Positions 4,481 to 47,027 of a stretch of DNA of 64,000 bases are shown one piece after another; within the stretch, counting starts at the first letter, position 1, and each line of letters begins with the position of its first letter. The notes below the pieces were generated by a model, which made no database searches, had not been told where the DNA came from, and worked only from the letters and a program-made list of their open reading frames with translations. A program made the position numbers and the translations under genes. The stretch spans positions 62,001 to 126,000 of IMG/VR virus record IMGVR_UViG_3300045999_008996. The stretch is one strand, 5' to 3'.

Positions 4481-4653
4481 TAGAGATAATGCGGTTTTTC
4501 TGTATCAAATTGGTAGAACTTCACGTCTTTCATATTGAGACACATACGAACAGTTTCGTGCTCTCTGTGTTCTCTATCTGTGCCTTTATATAGTCCTCTG
4601 CGTTGATAAGCACAGCACCAGACATTATAGTAGATTTTAGATTTATCGGTCAT
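4480..4653 (-). CDS. Hypothetical micro-protein (REHxTV motif)
   Basis: Manual: MTDKSKIYYNVWCCAYQRRGLY...EHREHETVRMCL. Confidence 0.65.
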   Translation of the reverse strand: MTDKSKIYYNVWCCAYQRRGLYKGTDREHREHETVRMCLNMKDVKFYQFDTEKPHYL

Positions 4654-4852
4654 CATCCCAAGGTGCTCTGCGACTCAATACTCTAGCGATCTTTTCGTTG
4701 TATTGTGGTGGTTTGTTGATTGCTTCTATGAGAGTATCATATGCTTCTTGACTCACATACATCTTTGTAGGTTTCATTCCAAGATGCTTGATGCACTTTC
4801 GTTCCCATCTCCATTCTTTATACTTATGCCATAATGACATTAGAAAGTTCAT
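4643..4852 (-). CDS. Small protein with DUF1778/TacA-like C-terminal segment
   Basis: VSQEAYDTLIEAINKPPQYNEKIARVLSRRAPW. Confidence 0.5.
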   Translation of the reverse strand: MNFLMSLWHKYKEWRWERKCIKHLGMKPTKMYVSQEAYDTLIEAINKPPQYNEKIARVLSRRAPWDDDR

Positions 4853-5064
4853 CTTTTGAATACCTCAGAATAGTATGGGTCTCTGCCTGATAGATTATAT
4901 GGGTCAAACCCTGGTCGAGTCATAATCCATTCATCTTCCATTTGCATATAACCCCATGAAAGTTCTTCAAAAAATGCAAGTCTATCAATATTATCTTCTA
5001 ATTGCAAACGAAAGTCAATGCAGTTTCTCCAAGACCAGAGGGCATTTTCAATCCACTGTTTCAT
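4849..5064 (-). CDS. Hypothetical protein
   Basis: ORF track, start MKQWIENALW. Confidence 0.65.
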   Translation of the reverse strand: MKQWIENALWSWRNCIDFRLQLEDNIDRLAFFEELSWGYMQMEDEWIMTRPGFDPYNLSGRDPYYSEVFKR

Positions 5065-5236
5065 CTGAGTAATTAACATAGAGATTGTCCCCACCAATGT
5101 TTAGATGAAAAATTTGACCATTGTTGAGATAGATTCCCAACCACACAGCACGACCTTCCTCCATTACCTCATAATGAAAAAGTTTTACATTCTCTAAAAT
5201 TATTTCGTCTGGATTCTTTATAAATTTTGAGGACAT
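5048..5236 (-). CDS. Hypothetical protein
   Basis: ORF track; first gene after promoter motif copy 1. Confidence 0.65.
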   Translation of the reverse strand: MSSKFIKNPDEIILENVKLFHYEVMEEGRAVWLGIYLNNGQIFHLNIGGDNLYVNYSDETVD

Positions 5237-5251
5237 CAAGGTTTTCTCAAT

Positions 5252-6166
5252 TCATAAGTGTATTATACCAGAGAGGGCACCCGATTTCAAGTTCCCCTGT
5301 GCCAGTTTTTCAACTGCCACAATGTCCTTATGTCTTTTATATTTTCCTATGTAAATCCTATAGATAGAACTTTGGTCATAACCATTTTCTTTTGACCAAT
5401 TACTTAATCCACATTGAGTAATAATTTTTCCATCAGCAAAAGTAATTTTCCAATAGTTTGATTTATGATGGTTTTTTCCAATTTTTATTTTATTCTTTTT
5501 TCCTCTTCCCAAAACCCAACCTTCTCCAGGACATTTTTTGGAAAATTTGTTATTTCCATTTTCATCATTCCACCAATACTTACCTGTATTTGATTCACTT
5601 TGTTTTCTTTTTGTTTTTTCAGAATGTGATTTGCCATAAAGTGGATGATTTTCTTTTGCCATTTTACCTTTAAGAGATTCACTTATTTTTTTTCTGTGTT
5701 CTTCTGAAAGTGGTTTTCCATAAAGTATGCTATTCTCTCCTTTATGTGCATTACTTTGTTTTCTTTTGGTTTCTTCGCTATGTTTTCTTCCTAAATTATT
5801 TTCTTTTATTTTTTGTCTATGCTCTGCCGAAAGAATTTTGCCCGTATGTGCTATTCTCAATTTTTCTCTTGTTTCTTCACTTCTAATACTACCAGAAAGA
5901 CCCTCACCACCATCAGTTTTATTTCTCAAAATACCAGTTCCTAAATCTTTCCTACCAAACACGGCAATCATATACTTCTCGTGCTTAAATGCTTCTTCCT
6001 CTGTTAGGTTTTGTTTTAGAAGTATTATTCGGGATTTATCTTTTGGTGGATAAACTTCACCTCTTCCTTTTCTATATACTCTATTATCTTTACCTTTACC
6101 TATGTAATAAGGAGTTCTATCCTCTCGCAAATATGCATAGGTATAAAATCTGTTAGGATTTACCAT
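5252..6166 (-). CDS. Free-standing GIY-YIG-type homing endonuclease with NUMOD3 repeats
   Basis: FYTYAYLREDRTPYYIGKG...R...E..MI...LRNKTDGGEG; HSEETKRK-type NUMOD3 repeats; start taken as MVNPNR, after the late promoter. Confidence 0.85.
   Translation of the reverse strand: MVNPNRFYTYAYLREDRTPYYIGKGKDNRVYRKGRGEVYPPKDKSRIILLKQNLTEEEAFKHEKYMIAVFGRKDLGTGILRNKTDGGEGLSGSIRSEETREKLRIAHTGKILSAEHRQKIKENNLGRKHSEETKRKQSNAHKGENSILYGKPLSEEHRKKISESLKGKMAKENHPLYGKSHSEKTKRKQSESNTGKYWWNDENGNNKFSKKCPGEGWVLGRGKKNKIKIGKNHHKSNYWKITFADGKIITQCGLSNWSKENGYDQSSIYRIYIGKYKRHKDIVAVEKLAQGNLKSGALSGIIHL
5262..5320 (-). promoter_or_regulatory. Repeated early promoter/stem-loop motif, copy 1
   Basis: TTGAAA(5285-5290)-17-TATAAT(5262-5267) with conserved plus-strand GTGCCAGTT box at 5299-5307. 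Confidence 0.7.
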
Positions 6167-6193
6167 TTCTACTCTTAAATTGGTTCGCAATAC

Positions 6194-6201
6194 TATTTAT
6201 A
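6194..6201 (-). promoter_or_regulatory. T4-type late promoter TATAAATA for the GIY-YIG gene
   Basis: Exact T4 gp55 consensus about 28 nt upstream of ATG. Confidence 0.8.
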
Positions 6202-6202
6202 C

Positions 6203-6260
6203 AAGAAAAGGAGCATTTCTGCTCCTCTCCCACCTTAAAGATGCGAACCAATTAAGGTAT
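6203..6260 (-). ncRNA. Putative antisense sRNA / RNA switch upstream of the GIY-YIG endonuclease
   Basis: ATAAATA at 6264-6270; 8-bp stem (6231-6238/6252-6259) around a segment complementary to leader 6178-6189; terminator aggagca-GAAA-tgctcct-UUUC. Confidence 0.5.
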
Positions 6261-6274
6261 TATTATTTATGTAA

Positions 6275-6571
6275 TTATTTTAAAATATCATCAACAGAAA
6301 CATAATCATAATCATCAATACAAAGTTTGAATCTTACAAAATCTAAAAAGTCCAATTCATCACACTCTGGAATATAATATTCTCCATCACCATCTCTATG
6401 AGTAAAATTAGCAAGATAATCCTCAAATACTACCATAATGGCAAGGGCACGAGAATGATCATGTTCTGTGATGGTTTTATGTGGGTGTGCCACAATTTTG
6501 GTGATACACTCAAAGAGTTCTTCACGGGTGTAAGAGAATGCTTTTGCTTCTTGGTTGAGTGTATAAGTCAT
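6275..6571 (-). CDS. Hypothetical protein
   Basis: ORF track. Confidence 0.7.
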   Translation of the reverse strand: MTYTLNQEAKAFSYTREELFECITKIVAHPHKTITEHDHSRALAIMVVFEDYLANFTHRDGDGEYYIPECDELDFLDFVRFKLCIDDYDYVSVDDILK

Positions 6572-6810
6572 TTCAATCTTTCAAATACATTACGAATATG
6601 AGATACTGAAAGATAAAACTCTCTGGTGTTTTGTCCTCCCAATACGATTGCGTTGAGTTCTTCAAGTGCTTCGTTGATGAGTTCTTGTCGTTCTGCCACA
6701 TTCATAACTTTCTGATAATCTTCTTCAGATACTTTAGCAACAATTACTTCATTTGTTGCCTCTCGTTCGGAAGCAATCTCTAGCATTTCTTCAAGTGTTG
6801 GGTCAGTCAT
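6568..6810 (-). CDS. Hypothetical protein
   Basis: ORF track, start MTDPTLEE. Confidence 0.7.
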   Translation of the reverse strand: MTDPTLEEMLEIASEREATNEVIVAKVSEEDYQKVMNVAERQELINEALEELNAIVLGGQNTREFYLSVSHIRNVFERLK

Positions 6811-7018
6811 TTTTTGCATCAAGTGTTTGCTTTACAATTCTGGCGGACTTTTGTGCTTTTGATTTCCATTCTTCAAGTTTTTCAATTCTATCACACAACT
6901 CGGTGATAATACCAATCAGACAATCATAATCAATATGCTCAATATCTTCACCATATTCTGGGTCATTATAGACATAGTAATTCAGTTCTTTCTTGAAGTT
7001 TCGGTCAGTCATAATCAA
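6803..7018 (-). CDS. Hypothetical protein
   Basis: ORF track. Confidence 0.65.
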   Translation of the reverse strand: MIMTDRNFKKELNYYVYNDPEYGEDIEHIDYDCLIGIITELCDRIEKLEEWKSKAQKSARIVKQTLDAKND

Positions 7019-7197
7019 TAGTTCTCATCAACATATAGTTCTGCCTCATCATCTTTTCCTTTATCATACATTACTTTGGCAAACTTCACAAAGGCATCAG
7101 GTTTTCCAGCAAACTCAGTCCATCCACAACCATCTTCTTCACACCATTCTTCGGTAAAGTATTCTTTTACCATTTGGAGGATTTCTTCAGTAGTCAT
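7015..7197 (-). CDS. Hypothetical protein, likely paralog of 7356..7574
   Basis: MT.E.I.Q....Y..E.W...DA..KFA+V+Y..G shared with 7356..7574. Confidence 0.65.
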   Translation of the reverse strand: MTTEEILQMVKEYFTEEWCEEDGCGWTEFAGKPDAFVKFAKVMYDKGKDDEAELYVDENY

Positions 7198-7363
7198 TTA
7201 GAATACCAAGAGCATAAAGTTGTCGTTCAATTCTCTCACTTGGAGTTCCAGTAAAAGCACCAACAAGTTCGGGATTGAGAGTATCAAGTTTCTGTGCGAT
7301 GTTCCAGCACTTATCTACTTCATCTTGATAGTGATTTAGAAGTTCCGTTAGAGGTTCAGTCAT
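7187..7363 (-). CDS. Hypothetical protein (58 aa)
   Basis: Manual: MTEPLTELLNHYQDEVDKCW...; fills the gap. Confidence 0.6.
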   Translation of the reverse strand: MTEPLTELLNHYQDEVDKCWNIAQKLDTLNPELVGAFTGTPSERIERQLYALGILNDY

Positions 7364-7574
7364 CATCAGAACTCCAAGTATTCATTTCGGTGCTTACATT
7401 ATTACTTTCCCAACCTTCATCATAACCCACTTTGAAACCTTCTGTGTAGATTACTCGGGCAAACTTCAAGAGTGCATCTTCTTCTAAAGGTTGCCATACA
7501 GCATCACCAATATCACCAGACCACAATTCTCTCAAATATGAGGAAGCAATTTGAATAATTTGTTCGTCAGTCAT
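7356..7574 (-). CDS. Hypothetical protein
   Basis: ORF track, start MTDEQIIQ. Confidence 0.65.
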   Translation of the reverse strand: MTDEQIIQIASSYLRELWSGDIGDAVWQPLEEDALLKFARVIYTEGFKVGYDEGWESNNVSTEMNTWSSDDD

Positions 7575-7812
7575 CGTATTCAGTAATAAAAGCAAATGCT
7601 AAACAAAACCTTCGTTGTTGAAAATCTACACTCATAAGAGAATTACCAAAGAAAGAAAACAAGAGGTTGATACCACCAGCAGAATGAATTATTTTACCGG
7701 GAGTTTCACAATTCACCCAAAGTAATGATTTGTTTTTGATGATACCAAACTGCCAGGTGTGAGATACTTCACCATCCTGATAAGTTTGTTTGGAGTGTTC
7801 GTAGATTTTCAT
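7567..7812 (-). CDS. Hypothetical beta-rich protein
   Basis: ORF track. Confidence 0.65.
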   Translation of the reverse strand: MKIYEHSKQTYQDGEVSHTWQFGIIKNKSLLWVNCETPGKIIHSAGGINLLFSFFGNSLMSVDFQQRRFCLAFAFITEYDD

Positions 7813-8006
7813 TTTTCAAGAACAAACAGAGTGTCAGAAATCATTTGTTTGGTGAAGTAAATTTCACCTTTATCAGTTACGAAAGAAAAGTATTTGAGGT
7901 CAGAAACTTTTCCCAAAAACTCTCCAATCTCCGCATATTTCTTTTCATCATATTCATTTTCAACACCTTCAAAGACACCGTATTTTGTGTGTGCGATGAT
8001 TTTCAT
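7809..8006 (-). CDS. Hypothetical protein
   Basis: ORF track, start MKIIAHTK after an AAGGA RBS. Confidence 0.7.
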   Translation of the reverse strand: MKIIAHTKYGVFEGVENEYDEKKYAEIGEFLGKVSDLKYFSFVTDKGEIYFTKQMISDTLFVLEK

Positions 8007-8030
8007 TGGAGTTCCTTTGTGTATGAAGTC

Positions 8031-8090
8031 ATTATACGACAAAACCACCGACCACAGGAGGGTCAGTGTGCCAGTTCATCAAGTGTACAC
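8031..8090 (-). promoter_or_regulatory. Repeated early promoter/stem-loop motif, copy 2
   Basis: TATAAT 8031-8036; plus-strand GTGCCAGTT 8068-8076 and AAGTGTACAC 8081-8090. Confidence 0.65.
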
Positions 8091-8390
8091 CTGAACCTCA
8101 AAGGTGTATGATTTTCTAAAATGTTCCATATTCATATGCATACTCACCACTTTTGCATCACCTTTTTGAACTTTACCAGCAACATCCAAAAAAGTATCTT
8201 CTGTTGGTTCATAAGATATGAAGGCTTTTGTAGGGTCTACTGCTGTAATACCAGTATTTGAAGTTGCGACCGATAAAGTAGTTACACCAGATACATTCCA
8301 TTCTGGTGGCAATTCAATTTTTTCTTCTACTACTGGTTCTTCTTTCTTTCCGTAAAGTTCTTCGTATTTTGCGATTAAAGGATTAGTCAT
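8079..8390 (-). CDS. Hypothetical protein
   Basis: ORF track. Confidence 0.7.
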   Translation of the reverse strand: MTNPLIAKYEELYGKKEEPVVEEKIELPPEWNVSGVTTLSVATSNTGITAVDPTKAFISYEPTEDTFLDVAGKVQKGDAKVVSMHMNMEHFRKSYTFEVQVYT

Positions 8391-8620
8391 TATACCATAT
8401 CCTCAAAGTCTCTGGGTTCTACATAAGGGTCTTCACAACCAGTATAAGCATACATTTTATTATTCATCTTATACCAGTCGTGATTGAGAGCATACCAGAA
8501 GGTCATGCAATACCAATCATAAAATCCAAGTCCTTCATCATAAGAACCAAATACATTAGTTTCTTCTGGAACTCTCATCCAGATTTTCCAATAATCAAAG
8601 ATTAGTTTAGTGAGTTTCAT
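8390..8620 (-). CDS. Hypothetical aromatic-rich protein
   Basis: ORF track, start MKLTKLIF after GAGGAGG. Confidence 0.65.
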   Translation of the reverse strand: MKLTKLIFDYWKIWMRVPEETNVFGSYDEGLGFYDWYCMTFWYALNHDWYKMNNKMYAYTGCEDPYVEPRDFEDMV

Positions 8621-8782
8621 AATACATATCCTCCTCATATTTTACATAATCACTTTGAAGATAGTTGAAGAACTCTCCATCATCGTGGGTCATAGTATAG
8701 CACCATTCATCAAAACATTCACCAAACCACCACCAACCAGATTGGAGTTTCTCAAAGACATTCATAGGACGATTGTATTTCA

Positions 8783-8968
8783 TCAGTCATACCTAATCTT
8801 CTTTGGATTGTTTTTGGTTCCACATACAGGACACTTTATACCATCCATCACCAGTTGTCTATCACAAGAATTACACCAAAAGAAACCATACTTTGCCTGT
8901 TTGGATTTCTCACGATTTCTTGGTGTATAGTCATCATCTATCTTTCTCATCCACCCAATAAAATCCAA
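8783..8968 (-). CDS. Small Zn-ribbon protein
   Basis: CNSC...CPVC. Confidence 0.6.
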   Translation of the reverse strand: MDFIGWMRKIDDDYTPRNREKSKQAKYGFFWCNSCDRQLVMDGIKCPVCGTKNNPKKIRYD

Positions 8969-9578
8969 GACAAGTTTTCATAAAGAACCGAACAATCATA
9001 CTCGGTTTATCAGGCATATAATACCTCAAATATCGTTGATTACCAATTGTATAATAACCTTTATGATTACTTCCCTGTTTGATTACAAAAGAGGTTTCAG
9101 TATAAGAACCAGCACTCAATCCAGTTGTTGTATAAGCAAGTTTTAGGTAAGGAAACTGTCCGTGCTCCTTTGCATATTCAAAGTTCTCAATAATTCTATC
9201 AAACTTTATGCTGTATAACTTTTCTGAAAGATATTTGGATTGATGGAACTTGTTTTTAGTATTCTCTATCTGGGCATCAATCTTCTCATCAAACTCTTGT
9301 GTGATTTCATCCAGAGTTTTAGGTTTCTCTGGGATAATAAGGAGATGTTTGACTTTATCAAAGTTTTCATTAGTTTCAGATACTTTCAATCCCATAGCAC
9401 AAAATACTGCCTCTACATCTTTGATAGAAGTTAGTTTAGTAGTATCTACATCATACCACTTACTTCCAATATGTAAAGTTCCTACTGGTGGAATATAAGT
9501 GTTGTTTTGAACGCTTGCTGGGTAAGTATCCAATACTGGTTGTCCTATGTTTTGTTCGGTTGGTTTCCAATCAGTCAT
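8934..9578 (-). CDS. Hypothetical protein
   Basis: ORF track, start MTDWKPTE. Confidence 0.75.
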   Translation of the reverse strand: MTDWKPTEQNIGQPVLDTYPASVQNNTYIPPVGTLHIGSKWYDVDTTKLTSIKDVEAVFCAMGLKVSETNENFDKVKHLLIIPEKPKTLDEITQEFDEKIDAQIENTKNKFHQSKYLSEKLYSIKFDRIIENFEYAKEHGQFPYLKLAYTTTGLSAGSYTETSFVIKQGSNHKGYYTIGNQRYLRYYMPDKPSMIVRFFMKTCLGFYWVDEKDR

Positions 9579-9707
9579 AATTTTCAAGTTCCTCACACAA
9601 TTCTAACACATTATCATAAATCACAGGGAAATAGTCCAAAGAGTAAGAAGTGCTACCTCCATAAACATTATCAAACTCTACAAAAAGTTCTTGAAGTTTA
9701 TAATCAG

Positions 9708-9884
9708 TCATTTTGCCTCCATAGCATTAATCACAGCATCACGAGCACTTTTACCTTTTGCTCTATTCATAGGAAATCCAGTATTTATAAACACCCAATC
9801 ACTCTCACCATTCATTTTGAGAGAATGTGGTTTGAATTGATTGAGTAGAAACTCAAGGATTTCTGTGTCTGATGGTTCAGTCAT
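9708..9884 (-). CDS. Hypothetical protein (58 aa)
   Basis: Manual: MTEPSDTEILEFL...SARDAVINAMEAK; ATGA overlaps. Confidence 0.6.
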   Translation of the reverse strand: MTEPSDTEILEFLLNQFKPHSLKMNGESDWVFINTGFPMNRAKGKSARDAVINAMEAK

Positions 9885-10057
9885 CGTATTCCAGTATCAA
9901 AGAGGTTTTTCAGTTCTTCATAAAGTGGTCGTAGTTCAACATATCTTCCATCATGTTTTAGATCACCAGTATCTTTTGTATATAATAGAAGTGTATAGAG
10001 TTGTCGTGCTTGGTCTTCTTGAAGTTCTACGACATAAGATTTTTTGATTTCAATCAT
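9881..10057 (-). CDS. Hypothetical protein (58 aa)
   Basis: Manual: MIEIKKSYVVELQEDQARQLY...; ATGA overlaps. Confidence 0.6.
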   Translation of the reverse strand: MIEIKKSYVVELQEDQARQLYTLLLYTKDTGDLKHDGRYVELRPLYEELKNLFDTGIR

Positions 10058-10338
10058 TCTACATCCCCCAAATCCTTTTCGTCAATCAAAATCACAGTAT
10101 CAAAGGGGATTTCACGACCAAGACCACAATACTTACCAAGTTGATACATAAGGCTCCAAAGTTGGAACTTCACATAACCATCTTCATCTTCCTTTGGAGG
10201 TTCATAAGGATACTTATCAAGCATTCCACCAGCACCCTGAGCACTCCAAAAGTCATTATGGTCTTGTTCCAGCATTTTTTTGCCGTGTTCTGTGAGTTTC
10301 ACACGAACATTATAGTTGATGTTGAAGGATTTAGTCAT
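10054..10338 (-). CDS. Hypothetical phage protein
   Basis: NINYNVRVKLTEHG...DEDGYVKFQLWSLM. Confidence 0.7.
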   Translation of the reverse strand: MTKSFNINYNVRVKLTEHGKKMLEQDHNDFWSAQGAGGMLDKYPYEPPKEDEDGYVKFQLWSLMYQLGKYCGLGREIPFDTVILIDEKDLGDVE

Positions 10339-10583
10339 AATTCAAGAAGTTTCTCAAGTTGTAGTTTTTGTTGGACGAGTTCAACACTTTTCACTCTTTC
10401 GTCATAAAATCTTTTCATATTCTCACGGATTTCTCTTTCTTCTGAGGTCAAATCCATTTGATATTGTAATTTCAAAAGAAGAATAGTTTCCAAATCTTTG
10501 AGGACACTTACTGGAATATCCAAAAACTCATCATAAGTCATTTTCCTATCCAAATAACAATGGACATAATCAACCAAATCCAT
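10335..10583 (-). CDS. Hypothetical protein
   Basis: ORF track. Confidence 0.6.
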   Translation of the reverse strand: MDLVDYVHCYLDRKMTYDEFLDIPVSVLKDLETILLLKLQYQMDLTSEEREIRENMKRFYDERVKSVELVQQKLQLEKLLEL

Positions 10584-10674
10584 CCCGCAGTATATAAAAA
10601 TGTTTTTTTACCTTCAACAATAAGACCACCTACACAATAAATCTGTGAGATAATCAGGAAGACATCACTTTTTG

Positions 10675-10872
10675 TCATTTGGAGTTCTCCAACTTGTAGA
10701 AATCATATTTGGTTTTACAAGCAGTTGGTTGTTTTATACAATACGAAATTGTTTTTTCTTGTGTTTCTTTTTGTGCTATTGATGTTCCATTAGTAAATCC
10801 CAGAGTAAAAAATAAACCAGCAGTAGCCATAAGAAGAATAAGAACTGGTGGGATGTCATTATCATCGTTCAT
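10675..10872 (-). CDS. Small single-pass membrane protein, tandem paralog A
   Basis: Hydrophobic N-terminus, YCIKQPTACKTKYDFYKLE. Confidence 0.75.
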   Translation of the reverse strand: MNDDNDIPPVLILLMATAGLFFTLGFTNGTSIAQKETQEKTISYCIKQPTACKTKYDFYKLENSK

Positions 10873-11054
10873 TTCTGGTTCTCCAACTTGTAGAAATCAT
10901 ACTTGGTTTTACAAGCAGTTGGTTTTTCTATGCAGTATGTAATTGTTTCTCTTCGTGTTGTTGATTCTGCGCCATTAAACCCCAACATAAAAAACAAACC
11001 AGCAATAGCAACAAAAAGAATAAGAAATGGGAAGAAATTATCGTCGTTGCTCAT
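10869..11054 (-). CDS. Small single-pass membrane protein, tandem paralog B
   Basis: Hydrophobic N-terminus, YCIEKPTACKTKYDFYKLE. Confidence 0.75.
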   Translation of the reverse strand: MSNDDNFFPFLILFVAIAGLFFMLGFNGAESTTRRETITYCIEKPTACKTKYDFYKLENQK

Positions 11055-11266
11055 TTCCGTGCCTCCCAATACTTACCTTCCATACCACATTCATAATACT
11101 TTCTCGCATGATCACAATACTTACCATTAGATCTTCCCGTCACAACATTTCCAGTCAAAGCAGGATGAAGGCATAAGTCAAATGTGTCTCCAAATCCAGT
11201 AATGCGAGCATTCCAATCTTTCTTATAAAAACGGCAGTCGCAACAGAGACGAATAGGTTCAGTCAT
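11051..11266 (-). CDS. Cys-rich small protein
   Basis: CCDCRFY...FDLC...YC...CG. Confidence 0.7.
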   Translation of the reverse strand: MTEPIRLCCDCRFYKKDWNARITGFGDTFDLCLHPALTGNVVTGRSNGKYCDHARKYYECGMEGKYWEARK

Positions 11267-11289
11267 TTGAAGTTTTTATCTATGAAAGT

Positions 11290-11347
11290 ATCATACCAGA
11301 AAAGGCACCTGTTTTCAAGTGCCCCTGTTCCAGTTCGTCAAGTGTCC
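11290..11347 (-). promoter_or_regulatory. Repeated early promoter/stem-loop motif, copy 3
   Basis: TTGAAA-17-TATGAT; ggcac/gtgcc stem; GTTCCAGTT 11327-11335, AAGTGTCC 11340-11347. Confidence 0.7.
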
Positions 11348-11628
11348 AACATCTTACGAATTTTATCACCAATCAATTCAAGAATACTTTTTTGTCTTGG
11401 AGACCAAGCACTATAATTCATACAAATGTGATTGTATAGTCGTGGAAACTGATTAACAAGATTACAATAATCACCCCCTGATTTCAAACATTTATCAAAT
11501 CCAGCGCCATTAGAACTTTTACAACAATGAATACAGTTACGGCAGTTGATAGCAAGACCAGAAGCAGAATCAACTTGAGTATCAATCAGTCCTTCCAGTT
11601 GTGCCCGTTTTTGTTCAAGATTGTTCAT
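11338..11628 (-). CDS. Cys-rich small protein
   Basis: CRNCIHCC...FDKC...YC...C. Confidence 0.65.
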   Translation of the reverse strand: MNNLEQKRAQLEGLIDTQVDSASGLAINCRNCIHCCKSSNGAGFDKCLKSGGDYCNLVNQFPRLYNHICMNYSAWSPRQKSILELIGDKIRKMLDT

Positions 11629-11843
11629 AAGTTCTCCAATTCATCACATACATCAAGTATAGCACGGGCATCAAGCACCATATCTTCCACACCTTCCTCT
11701 TCACAACACTGATAGTATTGGAGTTGTTCTACTACCTCACGGAGAGCATTAGCAATCTCATATCCATCAACATTACAGGGATGTGGTTCATTCTTCCAGA
11801 ATGCTTCAAATACTTTTTGTGCTACTTCTTTTTTGTTAGTCAT
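11625..11843 (-). CDS. Hypothetical protein
   Basis: ORF track, start MTNKKEVA. Confidence 0.65.
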   Translation of the reverse strand: MTNKKEVAQKVFEAFWKNEPHPCNVDGYEIANALREVVEQLQYYQCCEEEGVEDMVLDARAILDVCDELENL

Positions 11844-11963
11844 ACCAACACATCCAAGTAATACCAAAAAATGAACCAAGCATAAATCCTACAGCAACAT
11901 TAGAAGGAACTAAAAAGGAAATAGCAATAATAACTGCCCAGAGTAGAAAGATTTTCATTTTAG

Positions 11964-12158
11964 TCAAATCGGATAAGGTTGTTGTGGGTCTTTATACCAC
12001 ACTTTCTTGTACAATAACCACGGTTCATCACTATTGATATTATGAACCATTTGTGCCATCCAGTGGAAACCACAAGAATCTACGGAATCCAAATAATGAA
12101 TGCCTGTTTTAGGACAGATAGTTCTTGTGACAGATACAAACTTAATTTTCTCAACCAT
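11964..12158 (-). CDS. Hypothetical protein
   Basis: ORF track, start MVEKIKFV after GGAG. Confidence 0.65.
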   Translation of the reverse strand: MVEKIKFVSVTRTICPKTGIHYLDSVDSCGFHWMAQMVHNINSDEPWLLYKKVWYKDPQQPYPI

Positions 12159-12255
12159 AATCAAACTCCGTCTGGTAGATTTCCTGTTACACAAAGAATA
12201 AAAGCAACAATAAAGAAAATCCCAAGTCCTACTGGAAGTGAGTAATCTGGGTCAG

Positions 12256-12519
12256 TCATTTGTGTTCTTTATACCAACTAAGGTCTCTTGGTCGTGTAGT
12301 AATTACATCCAAATAAAGTTGAAATCGTTTGTATCGGATATAAAATCCAAGCAAAAACCCCGAACTGATACACAAAGAAAATTCTGGGAGGATAGAATCG
12401 GAACCAAAATCATCCCACTGGACTGTAATATCAACTAGAGCAAACTTTTGGAATCTAAGGACTTGGAAAAACCATTCTTTTCCAAAATCTTCATAAGTTT
12501 CATAATCAAAGAGTTTCAT
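12256..12519 (-). CDS. Hypothetical beta-rich protein, paralog of 14020..14298
   Basis: EDFGKEW...LP...G.LL motif shared with 14020..14298. Confidence 0.7.
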   Translation of the reverse strand: MKLFDYETYEDFGKEWFFQVLRFQKFALVDITVQWDDFGSDSILPEFSLCISSGFLLGFYIRYKRFQLYLDVITTRPRDLSWYKEHK

Positions 12520-12793
12520 ACTTTGCCTCAACTTCTTTCACACGCTCCATGAAACTATCCTCTCCGTGGTCTCCACTATACAAATAGTCCACGTGCCTCA
12601 TAATTTCTGCCATCTTACGCATCTTGAGAAGTTGTTTCCTCAAATAATTGATAGTTTCAGGTGAGAAGTTGGGAGGAGCATACTCATACTCATCTGGTTT
12701 GTTGTTGTTTTGGATTTCTACTTCCAACTCATCAGCAAACTGTGCTACCTTGTAGTAATCATAACCGCAATCGCCAAAATGTCCGCCTGAAAT
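12506..12793 (-). CDS. Hypothetical protein, probable AUU start
   Basis: AGGAGG (12801-12806), 7-nt spacer, ATT-TCA-GGC-GGA-CAT in frame with track ORF 12506..12727; in-frame TAG at 12809-12811. Confidence 0.65.
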   Translation of the reverse strand: MSGGHFGDCGYDYYKVAQFADELEVEIQNNNKPDEYEYAPPNFSPETINYLRKQLLKMRKMAEIMRHVDYLYSGDHGEDSFMERVKEVEAKYETL

Positions 12794-12820
12794 AGGATTT
12801 CCTCCTTTCTATCTGAACAT

Positions 12821-12877
12821 ATTATACCAGAGAAACACTTACTTCCAAGTGCCCTTGTGCCAGTTTCATAAGTGGTC
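12821..12877 (-). promoter_or_regulatory. Repeated early promoter/stem-loop motif, copy 4
   Basis: TTGGAA-16-TATAAT; GTGCCAGTT 12857-12865, AAGTGGTC 12870-12877. Confidence 0.7.
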
Positions 12878-13623
12878 TAATTTAGTTTTCTTCCTAATAC
12901 CCATCCATCAGCAGGACATTCTTCACTTCTTTTACATTCTATTCCATTATTCCACCATTTTTTAGTTTTCATACTTTCACTTATTTTTCTTTTACATTCT
13001 TCAGATAATTCTTTTCCATAATTGGGATTATTTTTTCCAAGTTTAGATATTTTTATCTTGGATTTTGTTTCTTCAGAATGTTTTTTTCCTGTATTTGATT
13101 TGCGAAGTTTTTCTTTGTGTTCTTCTGTCAACGAAGGTTTATTTCTTCCTGTATGAGAAATGGAAATTTTTCTTTTATGCTCTTCAGAAAGAGATTTGCC
13201 GTAGTTGTGATGTTTATCTCCTTTTTGACTTTCGCTAAAATATCTTATCAACTCTTCAGGATGTTTTTTGCCATAAAATGGATTATTTTTTCCAGATAAT
13301 GATTTTCTCCACCTATTTTTTAGATTTTCATACAAAGTAGAATTATAATATCTATTGTGTTTTCCATCTTGAGATGCTCTCATCATCCAAAAAGCATAAG
13401 TCATTTTTCTGGATTTTTCATTATCAATACCATATCTTTTTATAAATGCCTTTTCTAATAATGCGTGAGCAATATAATGCTCCTTCCCAGTAAGAACAAC
13501 AACTCTATTATTCTTTCCAAAAATACTTATGGGAAATGTATGGTGTTTTTCTGTATAACCTTCAGGAGGAGTTCTGTTCTCTGCTTTCCTTATAAGGTTA
13601 CAATATATCTTTAGATAGTTCAT
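12877..13623 (-). CDS. Free-standing HNH-type (MobE-like) homing endonuclease with NUMOD3 repeats
   Basis: YTEKHHTFP...VVLTGKEHYIAHALL; NPFYGKKH and HSEETKSKI NUMOD3 motifs. Confidence 0.85.
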   Translation of the reverse strand: MNYLKIYCNLIRKAENRTPPEGYTEKHHTFPISIFGKNNRVVVLTGKEHYIAHALLEKAFIKRYGIDNEKSRKMTYAFWMMRASQDGKHNRYYNSTLYENLKNRWRKSLSGKNNPFYGKKHPEELIRYFSESQKGDKHHNYGKSLSEEHKRKISISHTGRNKPSLTEEHKEKLRKSNTGKKHSEETKSKIKISKLGKNNPNYGKELSEECKRKISESMKTKKWWNNGIECKRSEECPADGWVLGRKLN

Positions 13624-13648
13624 TTCTATTCTATTGAAACCGCATTAG

Positions 13649-13656
13649 TATTTATA
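13649..13656 (-). promoter_or_regulatory. T4-type late promoter TATAAATA for the HNH gene
   Basis: Exact consensus about 26 nt upstream of ATG. Confidence 0.8.
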
Positions 13657-13659
13657 ATA

Positions 13660-13719
13660 GAAAAGGTGCCCAAAAGAGCACCCAATCTTATCTGTAGAGA
13701 TTGCGGTTTCAACAGATAT
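13660..13719 (-). ncRNA. Putative antisense sRNA / RNA switch upstream of the HNH endonuclease
   Basis: ATAAATA 13723-13729; stem tatctgt/acagata around a segment complementary to leader 13630-13644; terminator ggtgctc-UUUU-gggcacc-UUUU. Confidence 0.5.
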
Positions 13720-13728
13720 TGTTATTTA

Positions 13729-14016
13729 TCATGGTTGTGTCTCCGTTGTTACTGGGGGTGGGGATGGTGCTACTGGAGGTACTATAACAGGTTGTGGGAT
13801 TGGTTGGACAGGAGGTTGTGCCACTTCTACAACTGGTTTCTGAGATTCTTCAATTTGTTTTTCAAGTTCGCTAATTTTTTCTTCAAATGCATTAATACTT
13901 GGTGTTTCTACTGGTGAAGGATTTTTACTTTCTTCAGCAAGTTTCCAACCAGTAATACCAGCACCAAAAATACTAGCAAGTGCAGCAAAAACAGAAATAG
14001 TCTTTGAAAAACTCAT
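13729..14016 (-). CDS. Membrane-anchored/secreted protein with coiled coil and Pro-rich tail
   Basis: Hydrophobic N-terminus, PPVQPIPQPVIVPPVAPSPPP. Confidence 0.7.
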   Translation of the reverse strand: MSFSKTISVFAALASIFGAGITGWKLAEESKNPSPVETPSINAFEEKISELEKQIEESQKPVVEVAQPPVQPIPQPVIVPPVAPSPPPVTTETQP

Positions 14017-14019
14017 AGT

Positions 14020-14298
14020 TTAGTCTTTAGTAATTTCGTTTGGTTGAATGTAAAAAAGTTCATCTCGCCAGTTTCGACCAGCAATATCAAAAGTAAATCC
14101 TATTCGCCCAATAGAAAAAAGGACTGATAAGAGTCTACCATACCCCATAGAGATTTGGAGATAAGGTAACTCAATCCATTTTCCATATTCACCATAATCA
14201 ATCGCAAATTGAAGGAGTGAATATCGTCTTCCAGTACAAAGAGTCACATAATACTCTTTACCATAATCTTCTCTTACACCAACTTGAAAGAACTTCAT
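14020..14298 (-). CDS. Hypothetical beta-rich protein
   Basis: Start MKFFQV; paralog of 12256..12519. Confidence 0.7.
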   Translation of the reverse strand: MKFFQVGVREDYGKEYYVTLCTGRRYSLLQFAIDYGEYGKWIELPYLQISMGYGRLLSVLFSIGRIGFTFDIAGRNWRDELFYIQPNEITKD

Positions 14299-14756
14299 TC
14301 GGATGCTCTCCATTGTTTTCTCATTTTAACATACTCTGGATCATAGGCAACCTTGTCGCGTACTTCTTTAAATATGCTCGCAGACTGTGCTTTAATGGAA
14401 ACCAATGCATCTGCTTCTTGGGGTAATACGGCACCAGACGAATCGTATTTTTTTCCGTCCTTATGATTCGCATATCGTCGGCTGCGAGTGAATCCCATCT
14501 CAAGGAATTTCCGCGCCATATCCATTCCAATGAAATCCTTCTGTCGTTTGTAATCACAATACATTTCGTATATCTTATGAGAAGATTTACGAGCAGTAAC
14601 CACATCCTTGAACCTCCAATGAGCACAGATCTCATCAGTATATGGTCGAACAAGGAGCACTCCCTGTTCACCACGACCAATACGATAAAGTTTTCTGATA
14701 TTTATGTCAGTGAAGTTCAAGTTTTTATAATCTAAAGAGTAATCAAACTCCTTCAT
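14295..14756 (-). CDS. DUF4385 family protein
   Basis: YRIGRGEQGVLLVRPY...DFIGMDMARKFLEMGFTRSRRYANHK. Confidence 0.8.
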   Translation of the reverse strand: MKEFDYSLDYKNLNFTDINIRKLYRIGRGEQGVLLVRPYTDEICAHWRFKDVVTARKSSHKIYEMYCDYKRQKDFIGMDMARKFLEMGFTRSRRYANHKDGKKYDSSGAVLPQEADALVSIKAQSASIFKEVRDKVAYDPEYVKMRKQWRASE

Positions 14757-22980: not shown

Positions 22981-23819
22981 AATACCTCTTTCAAAAAGTT
23001 TTCCATTGGAGATTTTTTAAATATTTCTAAACCTTTTTCTGCTTGAGCATCAAGTTCTTCTGGTTTTTTAAGAAGTTTGTATGCAGTATCAACAAAACGA
23101 TTATAGGTTGAAGTGAACGTTGTTCCTTCCATATAATCTGGAAAGTCCGTATCTGGATTTCTTTCGCAAAGAACAGGAACCTTATTTTGAATGAGATGTG
23201 TAATTCTTACCATTTCAAAGATTTGATTATCATGATTATGGAGATTAATCACTAACTTTGCCCTCTTAATCAGTTCATCTCTTGCATCACCATAAGTTGA
23301 TTGAACCGCAACAAAATTAATCTTTTTGTTGTCGGCAAACTGTTTCATAATATGCTCTCTCCTTGGAGATGGGGAGAGATAAGCAAGAATATCAATATCC
23401 CTATCCTCTGGTTTATTTCTTTCAAAATAAGAGATTTCAGGAACATATCCAATCTTGAAATGTTTAATGTTTTCTACACCCACTTTACGAAGAACTTCAA
23501 CGTTTCTCATAGAGTAGTCCCACACCTCAAGACCTCTATATTTTTTACACCATCTTAAACATTCTGGTTGTTCTTTCATTTGTTCCAAAGAATATACAAT
23601 TGTATTCTTTGGAATATCATGTCTCACTACATCTACAGGACAATGGTGCATTCCAAATACAATATTTCTTCGGTCTGGTACAAAATCATTTACACTATTC
23701 GTTACATCATATCCCAACCTTTGAAGAGAAAAGAATACTGCTGCTTCAATCTCATGAAAAACTTCTGCATGAACATTAAAATGATTATCAGGTACAATTC
23801 TTACCAAATTAAATTTCAT
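22977..23819 (-). CDS. Putative GT-B glycosyltransferase-like protein
   Basis: VWDYS..N, SPRR, YGDARDELIKRAKLVINLH, FEMVRI. Confidence 0.65.
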   Translation of the reverse strand: MKFNLVRIVPDNHFNVHAEVFHEIEAAVFFSLQRLGYDVTNSVNDFVPDRRNIVFGMHHCPVDVVRHDIPKNTIVYSLEQMKEQPECLRWCKKYRGLEVWDYSMRNVEVLRKVGVENIKHFKIGYVPEISYFERNKPEDRDIDILAYLSPSPRREHIMKQFADNKKINFVAVQSTYGDARDELIKRAKLVINLHNHDNQIFEMVRITHLIQNKVPVLCERNPDTDFPDYMEGTTFTSTYNRFVDTAYKLLKKPEELDAQAEKGLEIFKKSPMENFLKEVL

Positions 23820-38240: not shown

Positions 38241-38572
38241 TAGATTGACTCACTAGGGTTTACCAGCACCATTCCATCAACAACTTTTGTTTTCTTACCT
38301 GTTGATGATGTAATAATTACATCATAGTAGTATCTTCCTGCCTTTAAGTCATCAGTGACTGTATTTGCAAGAGATACAACAACTTGTCCTGCAGCAGACA
38401 CAATTCCTACACCAAATGGAGTAGAAGTTGCAGACTCTGGAAATTTGCGAATTTTTGCAACCCCTGTATGTCCCGTTAAATCCAAAGGACTGCCATCAGG
38501 ATTATTTACAGTAAAAACTTCCTGATAATCTGTTCCTTGTTCAATAACAATATTAACTGCAGCGACAGCCAT
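38240..38572 (-). CDS. Small virion/baseplate-associated protein
   Basis: NIVIEQGTD...LDLTG...AKIRK...GRYYYDV; late promoter ATAAATA 38592-38598. Confidence 0.7.
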
Positions 38573-38658
38573 ATTTCTCTAATATTTTAAGTATTTATTA
38601 AAAAACTAGACACTATTAATGCCTAGTAATTTTACTTATAAAAATTCAAATAAGTCAG

Positions 38659-46528: not shown

Positions 46529-47027
46529 TTTTTATGATTATTTTCTGAAAGAGCATAGAGTTATTTAGATTAGTAGCATAAGAATGCCATAAATTACTTC
46601 TAAATAAAACCATTCTATTATACTTTGCAGTAATATTCCCATACTCTTTCCATAAACTCAAATCAGACTTAAAAACTTCTACAAGATTGTTTTCGTTGAT
46701 TTGATATTGATTCATTTCGTCTAAAGTTGGAAATGCTTCTAGTCCTGTTGCAAGATGCGAATAAAACTTAATTCCGGTCTCACCAAACGATTGCATTGGT
46801 AATGTCAGATAAATGACTGCAATCCAATCAGAACTAAGATGAGCAACAACATTAGAATCACCACCAACTTCATTCGTTGCTGAAATGATTTCAATAGGAT
46901 TACCAATAATCTCTGCAATTTTATTTACTGTTTCATTGGTAATCACACATTGATTCTCAAAAAAACCTTTATGATATTGGTGTGGAATATCATAAAGGTT
47001 ATCAACTATAACGATATGTTCTCTCAT
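46521..47027 (-). CDS. Degenerate DUF6445-like oxygenase homolog
   Basis: IVDNLY..P, W.AVIYLT, YNRMVLF...LWHS; HxD replaced by HLS. Confidence 0.65.
   Translation of the reverse strand: MREHIVIVDNLYDIPHQYHKGFFENQCVITNETVNKIAEIIGNPIEIISATNEVGGDSNVVAHLSSDWIAVIYLTLPMQSFGETGIKFYSHLATGLEAFPTLDEMNQYQINENNLVEVFKSDLSLWKEYGNITAKYNRMVLFRSNLWHSYATNLNNSMLFQKIIIKNG

What the first reader, a model, noticed from the sequence alone, without database searches (positions are those of the whole stretch)
6167..6270. Antisense-RNA cassette upstream of the GIY-YIG endonuclease (copy 1 of a shared architecture)
Seen, minus strand in order: late promoter ATAAATA (6264-6270); 8-bp hairpin taccttaa/ttaaggtg with loop UUGGUUCGCAUCU; terminator aggagca-GAAA-tgctcct-UUUC; second late promoter TATAAATA (6194-6201); leader UUGCGAACCAAUUUAAGAGUAGAA-AUG. 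Segment 6242-6253 is a perfect 12-nt complement of leader 6178-6189 and extends further with one bulge. Known: T4 intron endonucleases (I-TevI/II/III) are silenced by cis hairpins on early read-through RNA and released by a late promoter. Inference: here the anti-leader has its own promoter, stem and terminator, so it may be a ~55-nt trans-acting sRNA that limits a toxic nuclease, resembling a type I toxin-antitoxin.
Basis: partly seen in the sequence, partly recalled or inferred. Interest (0 to 1): 0.85.

Follow-up and report, generated by a model that had tools for sequence, protein, structure and literature searches.

The report
Portable RNA brake for homing endonucleases
A T4-like cyanophage carries two copies of a compact mobile control cassette that keeps a selfish DNA-cutting enzyme untranslated unless its RNA starts at a dedicated late promoter; the cassette recurs in over 100 related viral contigs and probably also releases its silencing segment as a ~56-nt RNA, a function not yet tested.

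Summary
A second copy lies at 13649-13730. At least 117 distinct homologous modules precede at least five types of homing endonuclease (HEG) N-terminus in viral contigs.

Three RNA helices show compensatory changes: the anti-leader:leader duplex, a local hairpin that holds the anti-leader in its loop, and an intrinsic terminator.

HEG-less alleles show that the whole ~1 kb unit is one insertion between two translationally coupled genes. It runs from the upstream ATAAATA to a sigma-70 promoter at the 3' end.

The core logic is already known. An upstream segment sequesters the 5' UTR, and a late promoter between the arms gives translatable mRNA. This is the phage T4 I-TevI/segB/mobE scheme, and it was noted in 2009 for cyanophage-like HEGs.

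I found no description of the upstream unit. It has an invariant late-promoter motif whose predicted start is the first base of the local hairpin, followed by a terminator. That predicts a ~56-nt late RNA. Pairing of that RNA in trans is thermodynamically favoured (about -13 kcal/mol for cognate pairs, -2 for non-cognate) but unproven.

It is not a type I toxin-antitoxin system, and it matches no Rfam family.

Verdict: a new variant of a known kind, with an interesting and testable sRNA hypothesis.

The parts
6264..6271 (-). P1: upstream late-promoter motif CATAAATA (copy 1). Predicted +1 at A6258.
   Evidence: Sequence. TAAATA is invariant in 62 of 62 homologous cassettes, and position -12 is A (51) or C (11). 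P1 lies inside the inserted DNA, 4 nt from the left junction. The phage's own late-gene-like ORFs use NATAAATA. No transcript data.
6231..6259 (-). H1: local hairpin (arms 6252-6259 / 6231-6238) that displays the anti-leader in a 13-nt loop.
   Evidence: The segment folds as H1 + terminator in 61 of 62 cassettes. There are 35 distinct stems. On the model-fitted alignment A3, 87.5% of cells are paired and 5 of 6 pairs show double changes.
6242..6253 (-). Anti-leader core: perfect 12-nt complement of the leader. Pairing extends into the H1 5' arm.
   Evidence: RNAalifold predicts 12 pairs, all with compensatory changes. 89.1% of cells are paired against 65.7% in shuffles.
6202..6226 (-). Intrinsic terminator: 7-bp GC-rich stem, GAAA loop, UUUCUUG tail.
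   Evidence: There are 48 distinct terminator hairpins, with 6 of 7 pairs covarying. The U-tract columns are at least 90% conserved.
6194..6201 (-). P2: consensus late promoter TATAAATA. Predicted +1 at G6188.
   Evidence: Sequence. TATAAATA in 63 of 65 cassettes. P2 lies between the two arms of the long-range helix, as in T4 I-TevI (PMC2988022).
6167..6189 (-). Leader / 5' UTR of the endonuclease mRNA. 6178-6189 pairs with the anti-leader, and the AAGAG region pairs with the H1 5' arm.
   Evidence: A median of 14 leader nt out of 18-25 are sequestered, reaching -7 or -5 from the AUG.
5252..6166 (-). Free-standing homing endonuclease gene (304 aa): GIY-YIG-like N-terminus plus NUMOD3 motifs.
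5262..5307 (-). 3' end of the cassette: AACTGGCACA motif, stem-loop and an extended -10 sigma-70 promoter (TTGAAA-17-TGgTATAAT) that restarts transcription of the downstream gene.
   Evidence: Best promoter match in the scanned 4500-14500 region, 11 of 12.. Absent from HEG-less alleles, so it arrived with the insertion.
13723..13730 (-). Copy 2 P1 (GATAAATA), overlapping the TGA stop of the upstream ORF.
13689..13718 (-). Copy 2 local hairpin. The anti-leader 13702-13716 lies in its 5' arm and loop.
13657..13683 (-). Copy 2 intrinsic terminator.
13624..13656 (-). Copy 2 P2 (TATAAATA, 13649-13656) and leader. The complement of the anti-leader is at 13630-13644.
12877..13623 (-). Copy 2 homing endonuclease (248 aa): HNH-like N-terminus plus five NUMOD3 motifs.
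12821..12865 (-). Copy 2 3' composite motif: AACTGGCACA followed by TTGGAA-16-TGgTATAAT.

Best explanation
This is the 5' control module of a self-contained, mobile homing-endonuclease (HEG) cassette. It uses T4-type temporal and translational control, plus two extra layers.

(1) Any RNA entering from upstream first transcribes the anti-leader, which is held in a local hairpin (H1). It then meets an intrinsic terminator that stops most polymerases.

(2) RNAs that read through carry both arms. The anti-leader plus the H1 5' arm then pair with almost the whole 18-25-nt 5' UTR, up to about -7 from the AUG. The endonuclease is therefore not translated.

(3) The late promoter P2 lies between the arms. 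Its transcript starts at the first or second base of the leader, lacks the anti-leader, and is translatable. The endonuclease is thus made only late and only from P2.

(4) A sigma-70 promoter at the 3' end of the cassette restores expression of the downstream gene, whose translational coupling to the upstream gene was broken by the insertion.

(5) The conserved upstream late-promoter motif P1 most likely fires late. Its start would be exactly at the base of H1, giving a ~56-nt RNA with two hairpins that ends at the terminator. If made, this RNA should pair through its loop with the 5' end of the P2 mRNA and damp translation in trans.

Shown: the sequence elements, their conservation, covariation of all three helices, the insertion boundaries, and the energetics.

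Inferred: promoter activity, termination, and both cis and trans repression.

My sub-probabilities:
- cis sequestration plus P2 release: about 0.85
- P1 makes a discrete RNA: about 0.65
- measurable trans repression: about 0.4
For: Folding and covariation:
- The cis fold is the minimum-energy structure in both window copies and in 62 of 62 homologous cassettes.
- RNAalifold recovers the long-range helix from a plain MAFFT alignment. All 12 predicted pairs show compensatory changes.
- For the long-range helix plus terminator, 89.1% of cells are paired against 65.7% in shuffles (0 of 500 reach the observed value). Covariation score is 0.664 against 0.270. Slid controls give 36-54%.
- H1 and the terminator covary on the model-fitted alignment: 88.8% against 69.4%, with slid controls at 38-57%.

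Prevalence and mobility:
- There are 117 distinct modules with about 34 address classes. They precede GIY-YIG-type, HNH-type and other HEG N-termini.
- A scan that required only P1, the start of H1 and one terminator class gave 72 analysable modules. About 71 are followed by P2, a cognate leader and an endonuclease-type ORF.
- In HEG-less alleles the two flanking genes overlap as ATGA. The ~1036-nt insertion therefore brought its own stop codon, P1 and the 3' promoter.

Evidence that P1 is a promoter:
- TAAATA is present in 62 of 62 cassettes.
- Position -12 is only A or C: 62 of 62 in the first sample and 72 of 72 in the independent scan.
- P1 has the same -5..+2 context as P2 (n-T-A-a-T-purine-C).
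- A(-13) variants and the Aeh1 'a/gC' form at positions -13/-12 are recognised late-promoter variants, and the TATA box spans -13 to -6 (PMC2988020).
- H1 starts at the 5th to 7th nt after the motif, which is the predicted +1.
- P1 is retained where a stop-codon role cannot apply, for example after a tRNA gene or after a divergent gene.

Trans energetics: cognate ddG averages -13.3 kcal/mol against -2.2 for non-cognate pairs. The two window copies do not cross-pair.

Precedent for the cis logic, for terminators and for embedded downstream promoters: PMC2988022, PMC2790892.
Against: - There is no transcript evidence of any kind. No isolate carrying the cassette (S-SRM01, B3, B23) has a transcriptome in the papers I could search.
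- An efficient terminator between the arms makes cis pairing rare, so why both layers are kept is not explained.
- P1's -13 position is random (A24, T17, G12, C9), whereas P2 keeps T in 60 of 62.
- The TAA triplets in and just after the P1 motif serve as the stop codon of the upstream gene in 22 of 55 loci, and stops overlap the motif in 28 of 55. This gives a partial non-promoter reason for conservation.
- Some terminators have poor U-tracts.
- The H1 covariation was measured on an alignment fitted to the model. On the raw MAFFT alignment H1 is misregistered and only 42% paired.
Confidence: 0.6

Rival explanations
1. Cis only. P1 is not an active promoter. Its TAAATA(A) is kept because it forms the left end of the mobile cassette and supplies stop codons in two frames for whatever gene the cassette lands behind. 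H1 merely insulates the anti-leader from arbitrary upstream sequence until the leader is transcribed. The system would then be a T4-like hairpin with an added terminator and nothing more.
For: - The upstream ORF's stop codon lies in or overlaps the motif in 28 of 55 loci.
- P1's -13 base is random.
- ATAAATA is not enriched in the window.
- Simpler relatives work without P1: L097, L099 and L024 have only the anti-leader and TATAAATA in a hairpin.
- The module is almost never found away from its endonuclease, with 1-2 orphan types among about 117.
- The cis mechanism is the experimentally established one (PMC2988022).
Against: - A stop codon needs three bases, yet all six of TAAATA are invariant, and position -12 is restricted to the two bases found in known late-promoter consensi (PMC2988020).
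- The motif is kept after a tRNA gene and after divergent genes, where no stop is needed.
- The spacing to H1 puts the predicted +1 on the first stem base in 58 of 62 cassettes.
- The -5..+2 context copies that of P2.
Confidence: 0.3
2. Trans first. The terminator is efficient, so the two arms are rarely on one RNA. The main role of the anti-leader is as a late, stable ~56-nt sRNA from P1. It titrates the P2 mRNA and sets a threshold for endonuclease synthesis, working like IS10 RNA-OUT/RNA-IN or a type I antitoxin.
For: - The P1 evidence listed under the best explanation.
- The anti-leader core always sits in a 13-18-nt loop, with a 5' stem at the predicted +1 and a 3' terminator hairpin, which is the shape of a stable antisense RNA.
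- The P2 mRNA keeps all but one base of the target.
- Cognate ddG is -13.3 against -2.2 kcal/mol for non-cognate pairs.
- The module is intact in five cassettes that have no co-directional upstream gene.
- Variants without a terminator also lack P1.
- There is precedent for short RNAs, terminated just downstream of a late promoter, acting as regulators (StxS, PMC7547250).
Against: - There are no expression data.
- Constant co-expression of repressor and target from two like promoters seems wasteful compared with a weaker ribosome-binding site.
- Two cassettes in one contig share the same address (L023 and L041), so orthogonality is not enforced.
- Defining features of type I toxin-antitoxin systems are not met.
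Confidence: 0.1
3. Chance complementarity or a generic terminator-plus-promoter junction with no regulatory pairing.
For: AT-rich genome. ATAAATA occurs at the chance rate in the window. There is a look-alike without an anti-leader at 38592-38670.
Against: z-scores of -4.7 and -5.8. 117 homologous modules with pervasive compensatory changes.
Confidence: 0.01

Closest known systems
T4-family late-promoter-in-hairpin translational control of homing endonucleases (I-TevI, I-TevII, I-TevIII, segB; Aeh1 mobE) (PMC2988022)
   Same: An upstream sequence pairs with the ribosome-binding region on long transcripts. A TATAAATA late promoter sits so that late transcripts lack the 5' arm. The genes are GIY-YIG or HNH endonucleases in a T4-like phage. 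Terminators and embedded downstream promoters also occur in T4 mobE and seg genes (PMC2790892).
   Different: - An intrinsic terminator lies inside the loop of the regulatory helix.
- The 5' arm is pre-folded in its own covarying hairpin.
- A second, conserved late-promoter motif precedes that hairpin.
- The whole unit is a portable module shared by several endonuclease families.
5' UTR hairpins containing TATAAATA upstream of free-standing endonucleases in cyanophage-like 'fractured gene' loci (Dassa et al. 2009, PMC2677866)
   Same: Same kind of phages and genes. That paper reports two conserved motifs that pair with each other on the stem, with a late promoter inside. It probably describes members of the same or a sister family.
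   Different: The paper interprets them only as cis translational hairpins. Its text mentions no upstream promoter, internal terminator, short RNA or large-scale covariation. I could not see its figures or supplement.
IS10 RNA-OUT/RNA-IN and type I toxin-antitoxin antisense RNAs (from my own knowledge, not tested against a paper here)
   Same: A mobile element limits synthesis of its own DNA-cutting or DNA-moving enzyme. A stem-loop RNA does this through its loop, which pairs with the extreme 5' end and ribosome-binding region of the mRNA.
   Different: Those RNAs are transcribed from the opposite strand and overlap their target. Here the RNA is encoded on the same strand upstream. The target here is not a small membrane toxin, and no differential-stability or addiction logic is evident.
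Short RNAs terminated just downstream of a phage late promoter, such as StxS from PR' (PMC7547250)
   Same: A late promoter followed within tens of nucleotides by a terminator yields a short RNA that regulates in trans.
   Different: StxS is a by-product of antitermination control in lambdoid prophages and acts on host targets. Here no antiterminator is known, and the predicted target is the adjacent gene.
CfrI antisense RNA of cyanophage S-PM2 (PMC2984593)
   Same: A non-coding RNA linked to a homing endonuclease gene in a T4-like cyanophage.
   Different: CfrI is about 225 nt and is transcribed antisense across the endonuclease gene and psbA. It has no sequence or architectural similarity to this module.
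PeSL composite terminator/early-promoter motifs of T4-like phages (PMC2839356, PMC4122927)
   Same: The cassette's 3' end (AACTGGCACA, stem-loop, near-consensus sigma-70 promoter) is a repeated terminator/promoter composite. It also occurs at two non-endonuclease sites in the window.
   Different: PeSLs were described in coliphages and vibriophages with other consensus sequences. They concern early promoters and recombination, not control of endonuclease translation.

Membership tests
T4-type cis RBS-sequestering hairpin with internal late promoter | An upstream segment complementary to the 5' UTR / ribosome-binding region forms a stable helix on long transcripts. | tested here: met
   Minimum-energy folds. 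62 of 62 cassettes fold this way. Covariation.
T4-type cis RBS-sequestering hairpin with internal late promoter | A late promoter (TATAAATA) lies between or within the arms, so late transcripts lack the 5' arm. | tested here: met
   P2 at 6194-6201, between arms 6242-6253 and 6178-6189. TATAAATA in 63 of 65 cassettes.
T4-type cis RBS-sequestering hairpin with internal late promoter | Early or middle read-through transcripts carrying both arms exist and are poorly translated. | not testable with these tools
   No transcript or translation data. The internal terminator would reduce such transcripts.
T4-type cis RBS-sequestering hairpin with internal late promoter | The regulated gene is a homing endonuclease (or late gene) of a T4-like phage. 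| tested here: met
   phrog_314/655 and NUMOD3 matches. Nearest records are Kyanoviridae cyanomyoviruses.
Independent trans-acting antisense sRNA gene | Own promoter with a mapped transcription start. | tested here: inconclusive
   The motif is invariant, its allowed variants match known late-promoter forms, and the predicted +1 is at the base of the hairpin (PMC2988020). There is no transcription-start data.
Independent trans-acting antisense sRNA gene | Own intrinsic terminator defining a discrete 3' end. | tested here: met
   GC stem plus conserved U-tract, covarying. This is met at sequence level only.
Independent trans-acting antisense sRNA gene | Represses the target when supplied in trans. 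| not testable with these tools
   Only energetics are available: cognate ddG -13.3 against non-cognate -2.2 kcal/mol.
Type I toxin-antitoxin system | The antitoxin RNA is encoded antisense to, or overlapping, the toxin mRNA (or divergently with a repeat). | tested here: not met
   The anti-leader is on the same strand, upstream of the target's promoter.
Type I toxin-antitoxin system | The toxin is a small, usually hydrophobic, peptide whose unchecked synthesis kills the cell. | tested here: not met
   The target encodes a 248-304-aa homing endonuclease.
Any Rfam 15 family | Score at or above the family's gathering threshold. | tested here: not met
   No hit in the window at gathering threshold. 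The best sub-threshold hit is 19.7 bits against a threshold of 50.
GIY-YIG endonuclease (copy 1 protein) | GIY-YIG catalytic domain recognised by a curated profile or by its fold. | tested here: inconclusive
   - The motif Y8-T-Y ... Y20-Y-I-G ... R29 is invariant among 20 homologs.
- Pfam LEM-3_GIY-YIG scores 19.6 bits, below the 27-bit cut-off.
- PDB profile hits to GIY-YIG proteins have E = 0.1.
- The AlphaFold2 model has pLDDT 54 and was not searched.

The most novel reading that the evidence does not exclude
P1-H1-terminator is a real gene for a new class of regulator: a ~56-nt 'anti-leader' sRNA encoded on the same strand, immediately upstream of its target's promoter. It would be transcribed late from its own gp55-type promoter and would pair through its loop with the 5' end of the neighbouring endonuclease mRNA. 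The roughly 34 address classes would then be a natural library of orthogonal RNA-RNA switches that travel with different homing endonucleases. Rare orphan copies (L031/L033) might even silence the endonuclease of a co-infecting phage.
Probability: 0.4. Interest if true: 0.8.

Novelty: new variant of a known kind. Interest (0 to 1): 0.6.

Why it matters
- **Selfish-gene biology.** Homing endonucleases are selfish genes that must avoid harming the phage they ride in. How free-standing ones are regulated outside T4 is largely unknown.
- **A reusable unit.** This cassette shows a complete, reusable solution in one ~1 kb unit: stop codon, late promoter, pre-folded anti-leader, terminator, late promoter, short UTR, gene, and a restart promoter. 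It is shared by at least five types of endonuclease N-terminus in more than 100 distinct modules.
- **Annotation.** It gives a precise signature for such genes, which are currently mislabelled 'translation initiation factor 2' in several GenBank records.
- **Insertion anatomy.** It is a clear example of how an insertion into a translationally coupled operon repairs the damage it causes.
- **A testable sRNA.** It makes a sharp prediction of a phage late sRNA in culturable systems (S-SRM01, B3, B23).
- **Synthetic biology.** If the trans action is real, this would be a new genetic arrangement for antisense control and a source of dozens of naturally orthogonal short RNA pairs.

Tried and rejected
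- **Rfam.** Neither the gathering-threshold search nor the permissive search found anything.
- **Other copies in the window.** The covariance model finds only the two cassettes. The ATAAATA pair at 38592/38670 has a hairpin and a terminator but no endonuclease and no convincing anti-leader.
- **Testing H1 on the plain MAFFT alignment.** This failed through misregistration (42% paired, best at slide +1). It was redone with a covariance-model alignment, which leans towards the model.
- **'Orphan sRNA as immunity against foreign endonucleases'.** Orphans are rare. One type is L031/L033. A second, L208, looks like a deletion remnant. In the unbiased scan, about 71 of 72 modules are attached to an endonuclease. 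The idea is not supported as a general function.
- **'P1 is only a portable stop codon'.** This explains at most 28 of 55 loci. It does not explain the six invariant bases or the retention of P1 after a tRNA gene or a divergent gene.
- **Address orthogonality within genomes as a test of trans action.** L023 and L041 in one contig share an address, so the test is not informative.
- **Confirming GIY-YIG.** PDB sequence search found nothing. The profile search gave weak hits only. The AlphaFold2 model had low confidence, so no fold search was run.
- **Literature.** I found no description of the upstream promoter/terminator unit or of a short RNA, and no transcriptome for S-SRM01. The figures and supplement of PMC2677866 could not be read.
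Full report
**1. What is in the window**

Genes here run on the minus strand of a 37% GC T4-like cyanomyovirus. The nearest records are Synechococcus phages S-SRM01 and S-RIM32, and the contig is a 222.6-kb IMG/VR UViG.

Reading 6280 to 6160 on the minus strand gives these elements in order:
- the stop codon of a 98-aa ORF (TAA, 6277-6275);
- ATAAATA (6270-6264);
- a hairpin with arms 6252-6259 / 6231-6238 and a 13-nt loop;
- a GC-rich 7-bp hairpin with a GAAA loop and a U-rich tail (6226-6202);
- TATAAATA (6201-6194);
- a 22-nt leader;
- the ATG (6166) of a 304-aa endonuclease.

The 12-nt perfect complement 6242-6253 / 6178-6189 is confirmed. Such repeats are expected about 0.5 times per 64 kb.

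Folded as one RNA, the region adopts the long-range anti-leader:leader helix with the terminator hairpin inside its loop (-40.6 kcal/mol, z = -4.7).

The protein has NUMOD3 motifs and matches PHROG homing-endonuclease families. Its GIY-YIG nature is likely from motifs but is not formally established.

**2. The second copy**

At 13730-13624 the same order of parts precedes a 248-aa HNH-like/NUMOD3 endonuclease:
- GATAAATA overlapping a TGA stop;
- a local hairpin;
- a terminator;
- TATAAATA;
- the leader.

The paired sequences are different from copy 1 (15-nt duplex, z = -5.8). A covariance model of the module finds exactly these two sites in the window. No Rfam family matches.

**3. Relatives**

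Searching IMG/VR with the two proteins gave 158 loci. Sixty-two non-redundant upstream regions have the full architecture.

A second scan did not depend on protein similarity. It asked only for TAAATA, the first bases of the hairpin and one terminator class.
- About 71 of them are followed by a late promoter (TATAAATA, or CTAAATA in three), a cognate leader and an endonuclease-type ORF.

The union of the two samples is 117 distinct modules with about 34 address classes.

The ORFs fall into at least five N-terminal types: three GIY-YIG-like, one classic GIY-YIG and one HNH-like. The same 5' module, even the same address, occurs with different endonuclease families (L003 and L081). The module is therefore exchangeable.

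Cultured phages S-SRM01, B3 and B23 carry it. Their endonucleases are annotated 'translation initiation factor 2'.

**4. Covariation**

- RNAalifold on a plain MAFFT alignment recovers the long-range helix. There are 12 pairs, and every one shows changes on both sides. For example, one pair is UA 24, GC 20, CG 16.
- With the terminator added, 89.1% of cells pair against 65.7% in shuffles (0 of 500 reach this value). The covariation score is 0.664 against 0.270, and slid controls give 36-54%.
- The helix includes the 5' arm of the local hairpin, which pairs with the purine-rich AGAG(C/U) just upstream of the AUG.
- In 62 of 62 cassettes the minimum-energy fold of a transcript carrying both arms is this helix. 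It covers a median of 14 nt of the 18-25-nt UTR, to -7 or -5 from the AUG.
- The local hairpin (H1) is misaligned by MAFFT. On a covariance-model alignment it is 87.5% paired, with double changes at 5 of 6 pairs. The terminator is 89.9% paired, with double changes at 6 of 7 pairs. That alignment leans towards the model.
- As an alignment-free check, 61 of 62 segments fold as H1 plus terminator. There are 35 distinct H1 stems and 48 distinct terminator hairpins, and chimeras of non-cognate halves are weaker.

The H1 5' arm therefore has two conserved alternative partners.

**5. The cassette is one insertion**

In at least 12 contigs the homologs of the two flanking genes (window 6275-6571 and 5048-5239) overlap by ATGA, which is classic translational coupling. 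Other contigs carry unrelated inserts at that spot.

In the window the gap is about 1036 nt. The inserted DNA begins with a new stop codon (TAA) and 4 nt, followed by P1. It ends with a near-consensus extended -10 sigma-70 promoter (5290-5262, the best match in the scanned 4500-14500 region) and a ~30-nt leader for the downstream gene.

So P1 belongs to the mobile unit and is not a promoter of the recipient phage. The unit ends upstream transcription and restarts it downstream.

The 3' composite (AACTGGCACA, stem-loop, TGGTATAAT) also occurs at two non-endonuclease sites in the window and after about 10 of 60 relatives. It resembles the PeSL elements of other T4-like phages (PMC4122927).

**6. 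Is the upstream ATAAATA a promoter?**

For:
- TAAATA is present in all 62 canonical cassettes.
- Position -12 is A or C only: 51 and 11 in one sample, 57 and 15 in the independent scan.
- These are the two forms known as late-promoter consensi in the T4 family. A(-13) variants are common in T4, and Aeh1 uses a/gC at -13/-12 (PMC2988020). The cyanophage consensus is NATAAATA (PMC2984593).
- The window's own late-gene-like ORFs use A/C-ATAAATA.
- The -5..+2 context (n-T-A-a-T-purine-C) is the same as at P2.
- With the TATA box at -13 to -6, the predicted +1 is the first base (+/-1) of H1 in 58 of 62 cassettes.
- The motif persists after a tRNA gene and after divergently transcribed genes.
- Simpler variants lacking the terminator also lack P1.

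Against:
- Position -13 is random.
- The motif doubles as the upstream gene's stop codon in many loci.
- There are no transcript data.

I put the chance that P1 makes a discrete ~56-nt RNA at about 0.65.

**7. Cis or trans?**

The cis mechanism follows physically for any RNA carrying both arms. It is the established T4 scheme for I-TevI, I-TevII, I-TevIII, segB and Aeh1 mobE (PMC2988022). Hairpins containing TATAAATA were reported upstream of cyanophage-like free-standing endonucleases in 2009 (PMC2677866).

Trans pairing is feasible:
- After paying to open H1, the cognate heterodimer gains a mean of -13.3 kcal/mol, against -2.2 for non-cognate pairs.
- The two window cassettes do not cross-react.
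- The P2 mRNA retains all but one base of the target.

If P1 fires at rates like P2, some trans repression seems hard to avoid. Sequence alone cannot show it.

Orphan modules are rare and look like remnants (L031/L033 before a baseplate-hub gene, and L208), so a free-standing role is not supported.

**8. Comparison and verdict**

- The module works like, and by its testable features belongs with, the T4-type late-promoter-in-hairpin controls.
- It adds an internal terminator, a pre-folded anti-leader and a probable second late promoter.
- It is not a type I toxin-antitoxin system, because two defining features are not met. It resembles IS10 RNA-OUT/RNA-IN only in the loop-to-5'-end geometry.
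- Novelty: a new variant of a known kind.
- The sRNA reading has probability about 0.4. It would be notable if true, and it is directly testable in S-SRM01.

Noticed in passing
window 5262-5307, ~8030-8076, 11290-11335, 12821-12865 (minus strand): A repeated composite motif: CACTTGAnGAACTGG(C/A)ACA, then a GC stem-loop with a U-run, then TGGTAT(A/G)AT (a near-consensus extended -10 sigma-70 promoter). Two copies end the two endonuclease cassettes and two are elsewhere. It is also seen after about 10 of 60 related endonuclease genes and in S-SRM01. It looks like a cyanophage counterpart of PeSL terminator/early-promoter elements.
   Followed up: partly
window 38592-38670 (minus), ORFs 38240-38572 and 33960-38240: A look-alike arrangement (ATAAATA, hairpin, terminator, ATAAATA) lies upstream of a 110-aa ORF. 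That ORF is followed by a 1426-aa ORF made largely of collagen-like G-x-x repeats. There is no endonuclease and no clear anti-leader. It is probably an ordinary terminator plus late-promoter junction.
   Followed up: partly
L159 (S-SRM01, MW015081 62515-63273), L160 (phage B23 41542-42165); also B3 and Sf-CH5: Homing endonucleases of this family are annotated 'translation initiation factor 2' in GenBank records. This is probably a misannotation.
   Followed up: partly
L033 3107-3186 (minus; identical in L031) and L208 1660-1730: Orphan modules (upstream promoter, hairpin, terminator) with no adjacent cognate leader or endonuclease. One lies before a baseplate-hub gene (phrog_150). The other keeps a leader remnant, which suggests the endonuclease was deleted.
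   Followed up: partly
L101 304-420: A chimeric cassette. Its anti-leader (gtgtgtcgca) does not match its leader (tgcggtttcaa). This implies recombination at or near the internal TATAAATA and gives a naturally unpaired variant.
   Followed up: no
L286, L300, L301, L315, L318-L326 versus window 5239-6275: The site between the homologs of window genes 6275-6571 and 5048-5239 is an insertion hot spot. HEG-less alleles overlap by ATGA. Other contigs carry unrelated inserts in gaps of 150-535 nt that encode small ORFs.
   Followed up: partly
L083 1333-2575: Here a cassette sits between tRNA-Leu and tRNA-Thr genes, and its upstream TATAAATA abuts the tRNA 3' end. This recalls T4 segB in the tRNA cluster.
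   Followed up: no
L005, L012, L023, L050, L031 (about 50 nt upstream of the module): In these loci the cassette follows a long, divergently transcribed ORF. Back-to-back ATAAATA motifs lie on the two strands, so no co-directional upstream gene can feed read-through RNA into it. The module is nevertheless intact.
   Followed up: partly
window 23583-23614 and 46964-47000: These are the only other perfect 12-nt inverted repeats in the window with arms no more than 90 nt apart. They are probably hairpins or terminators.
   Followed up: no
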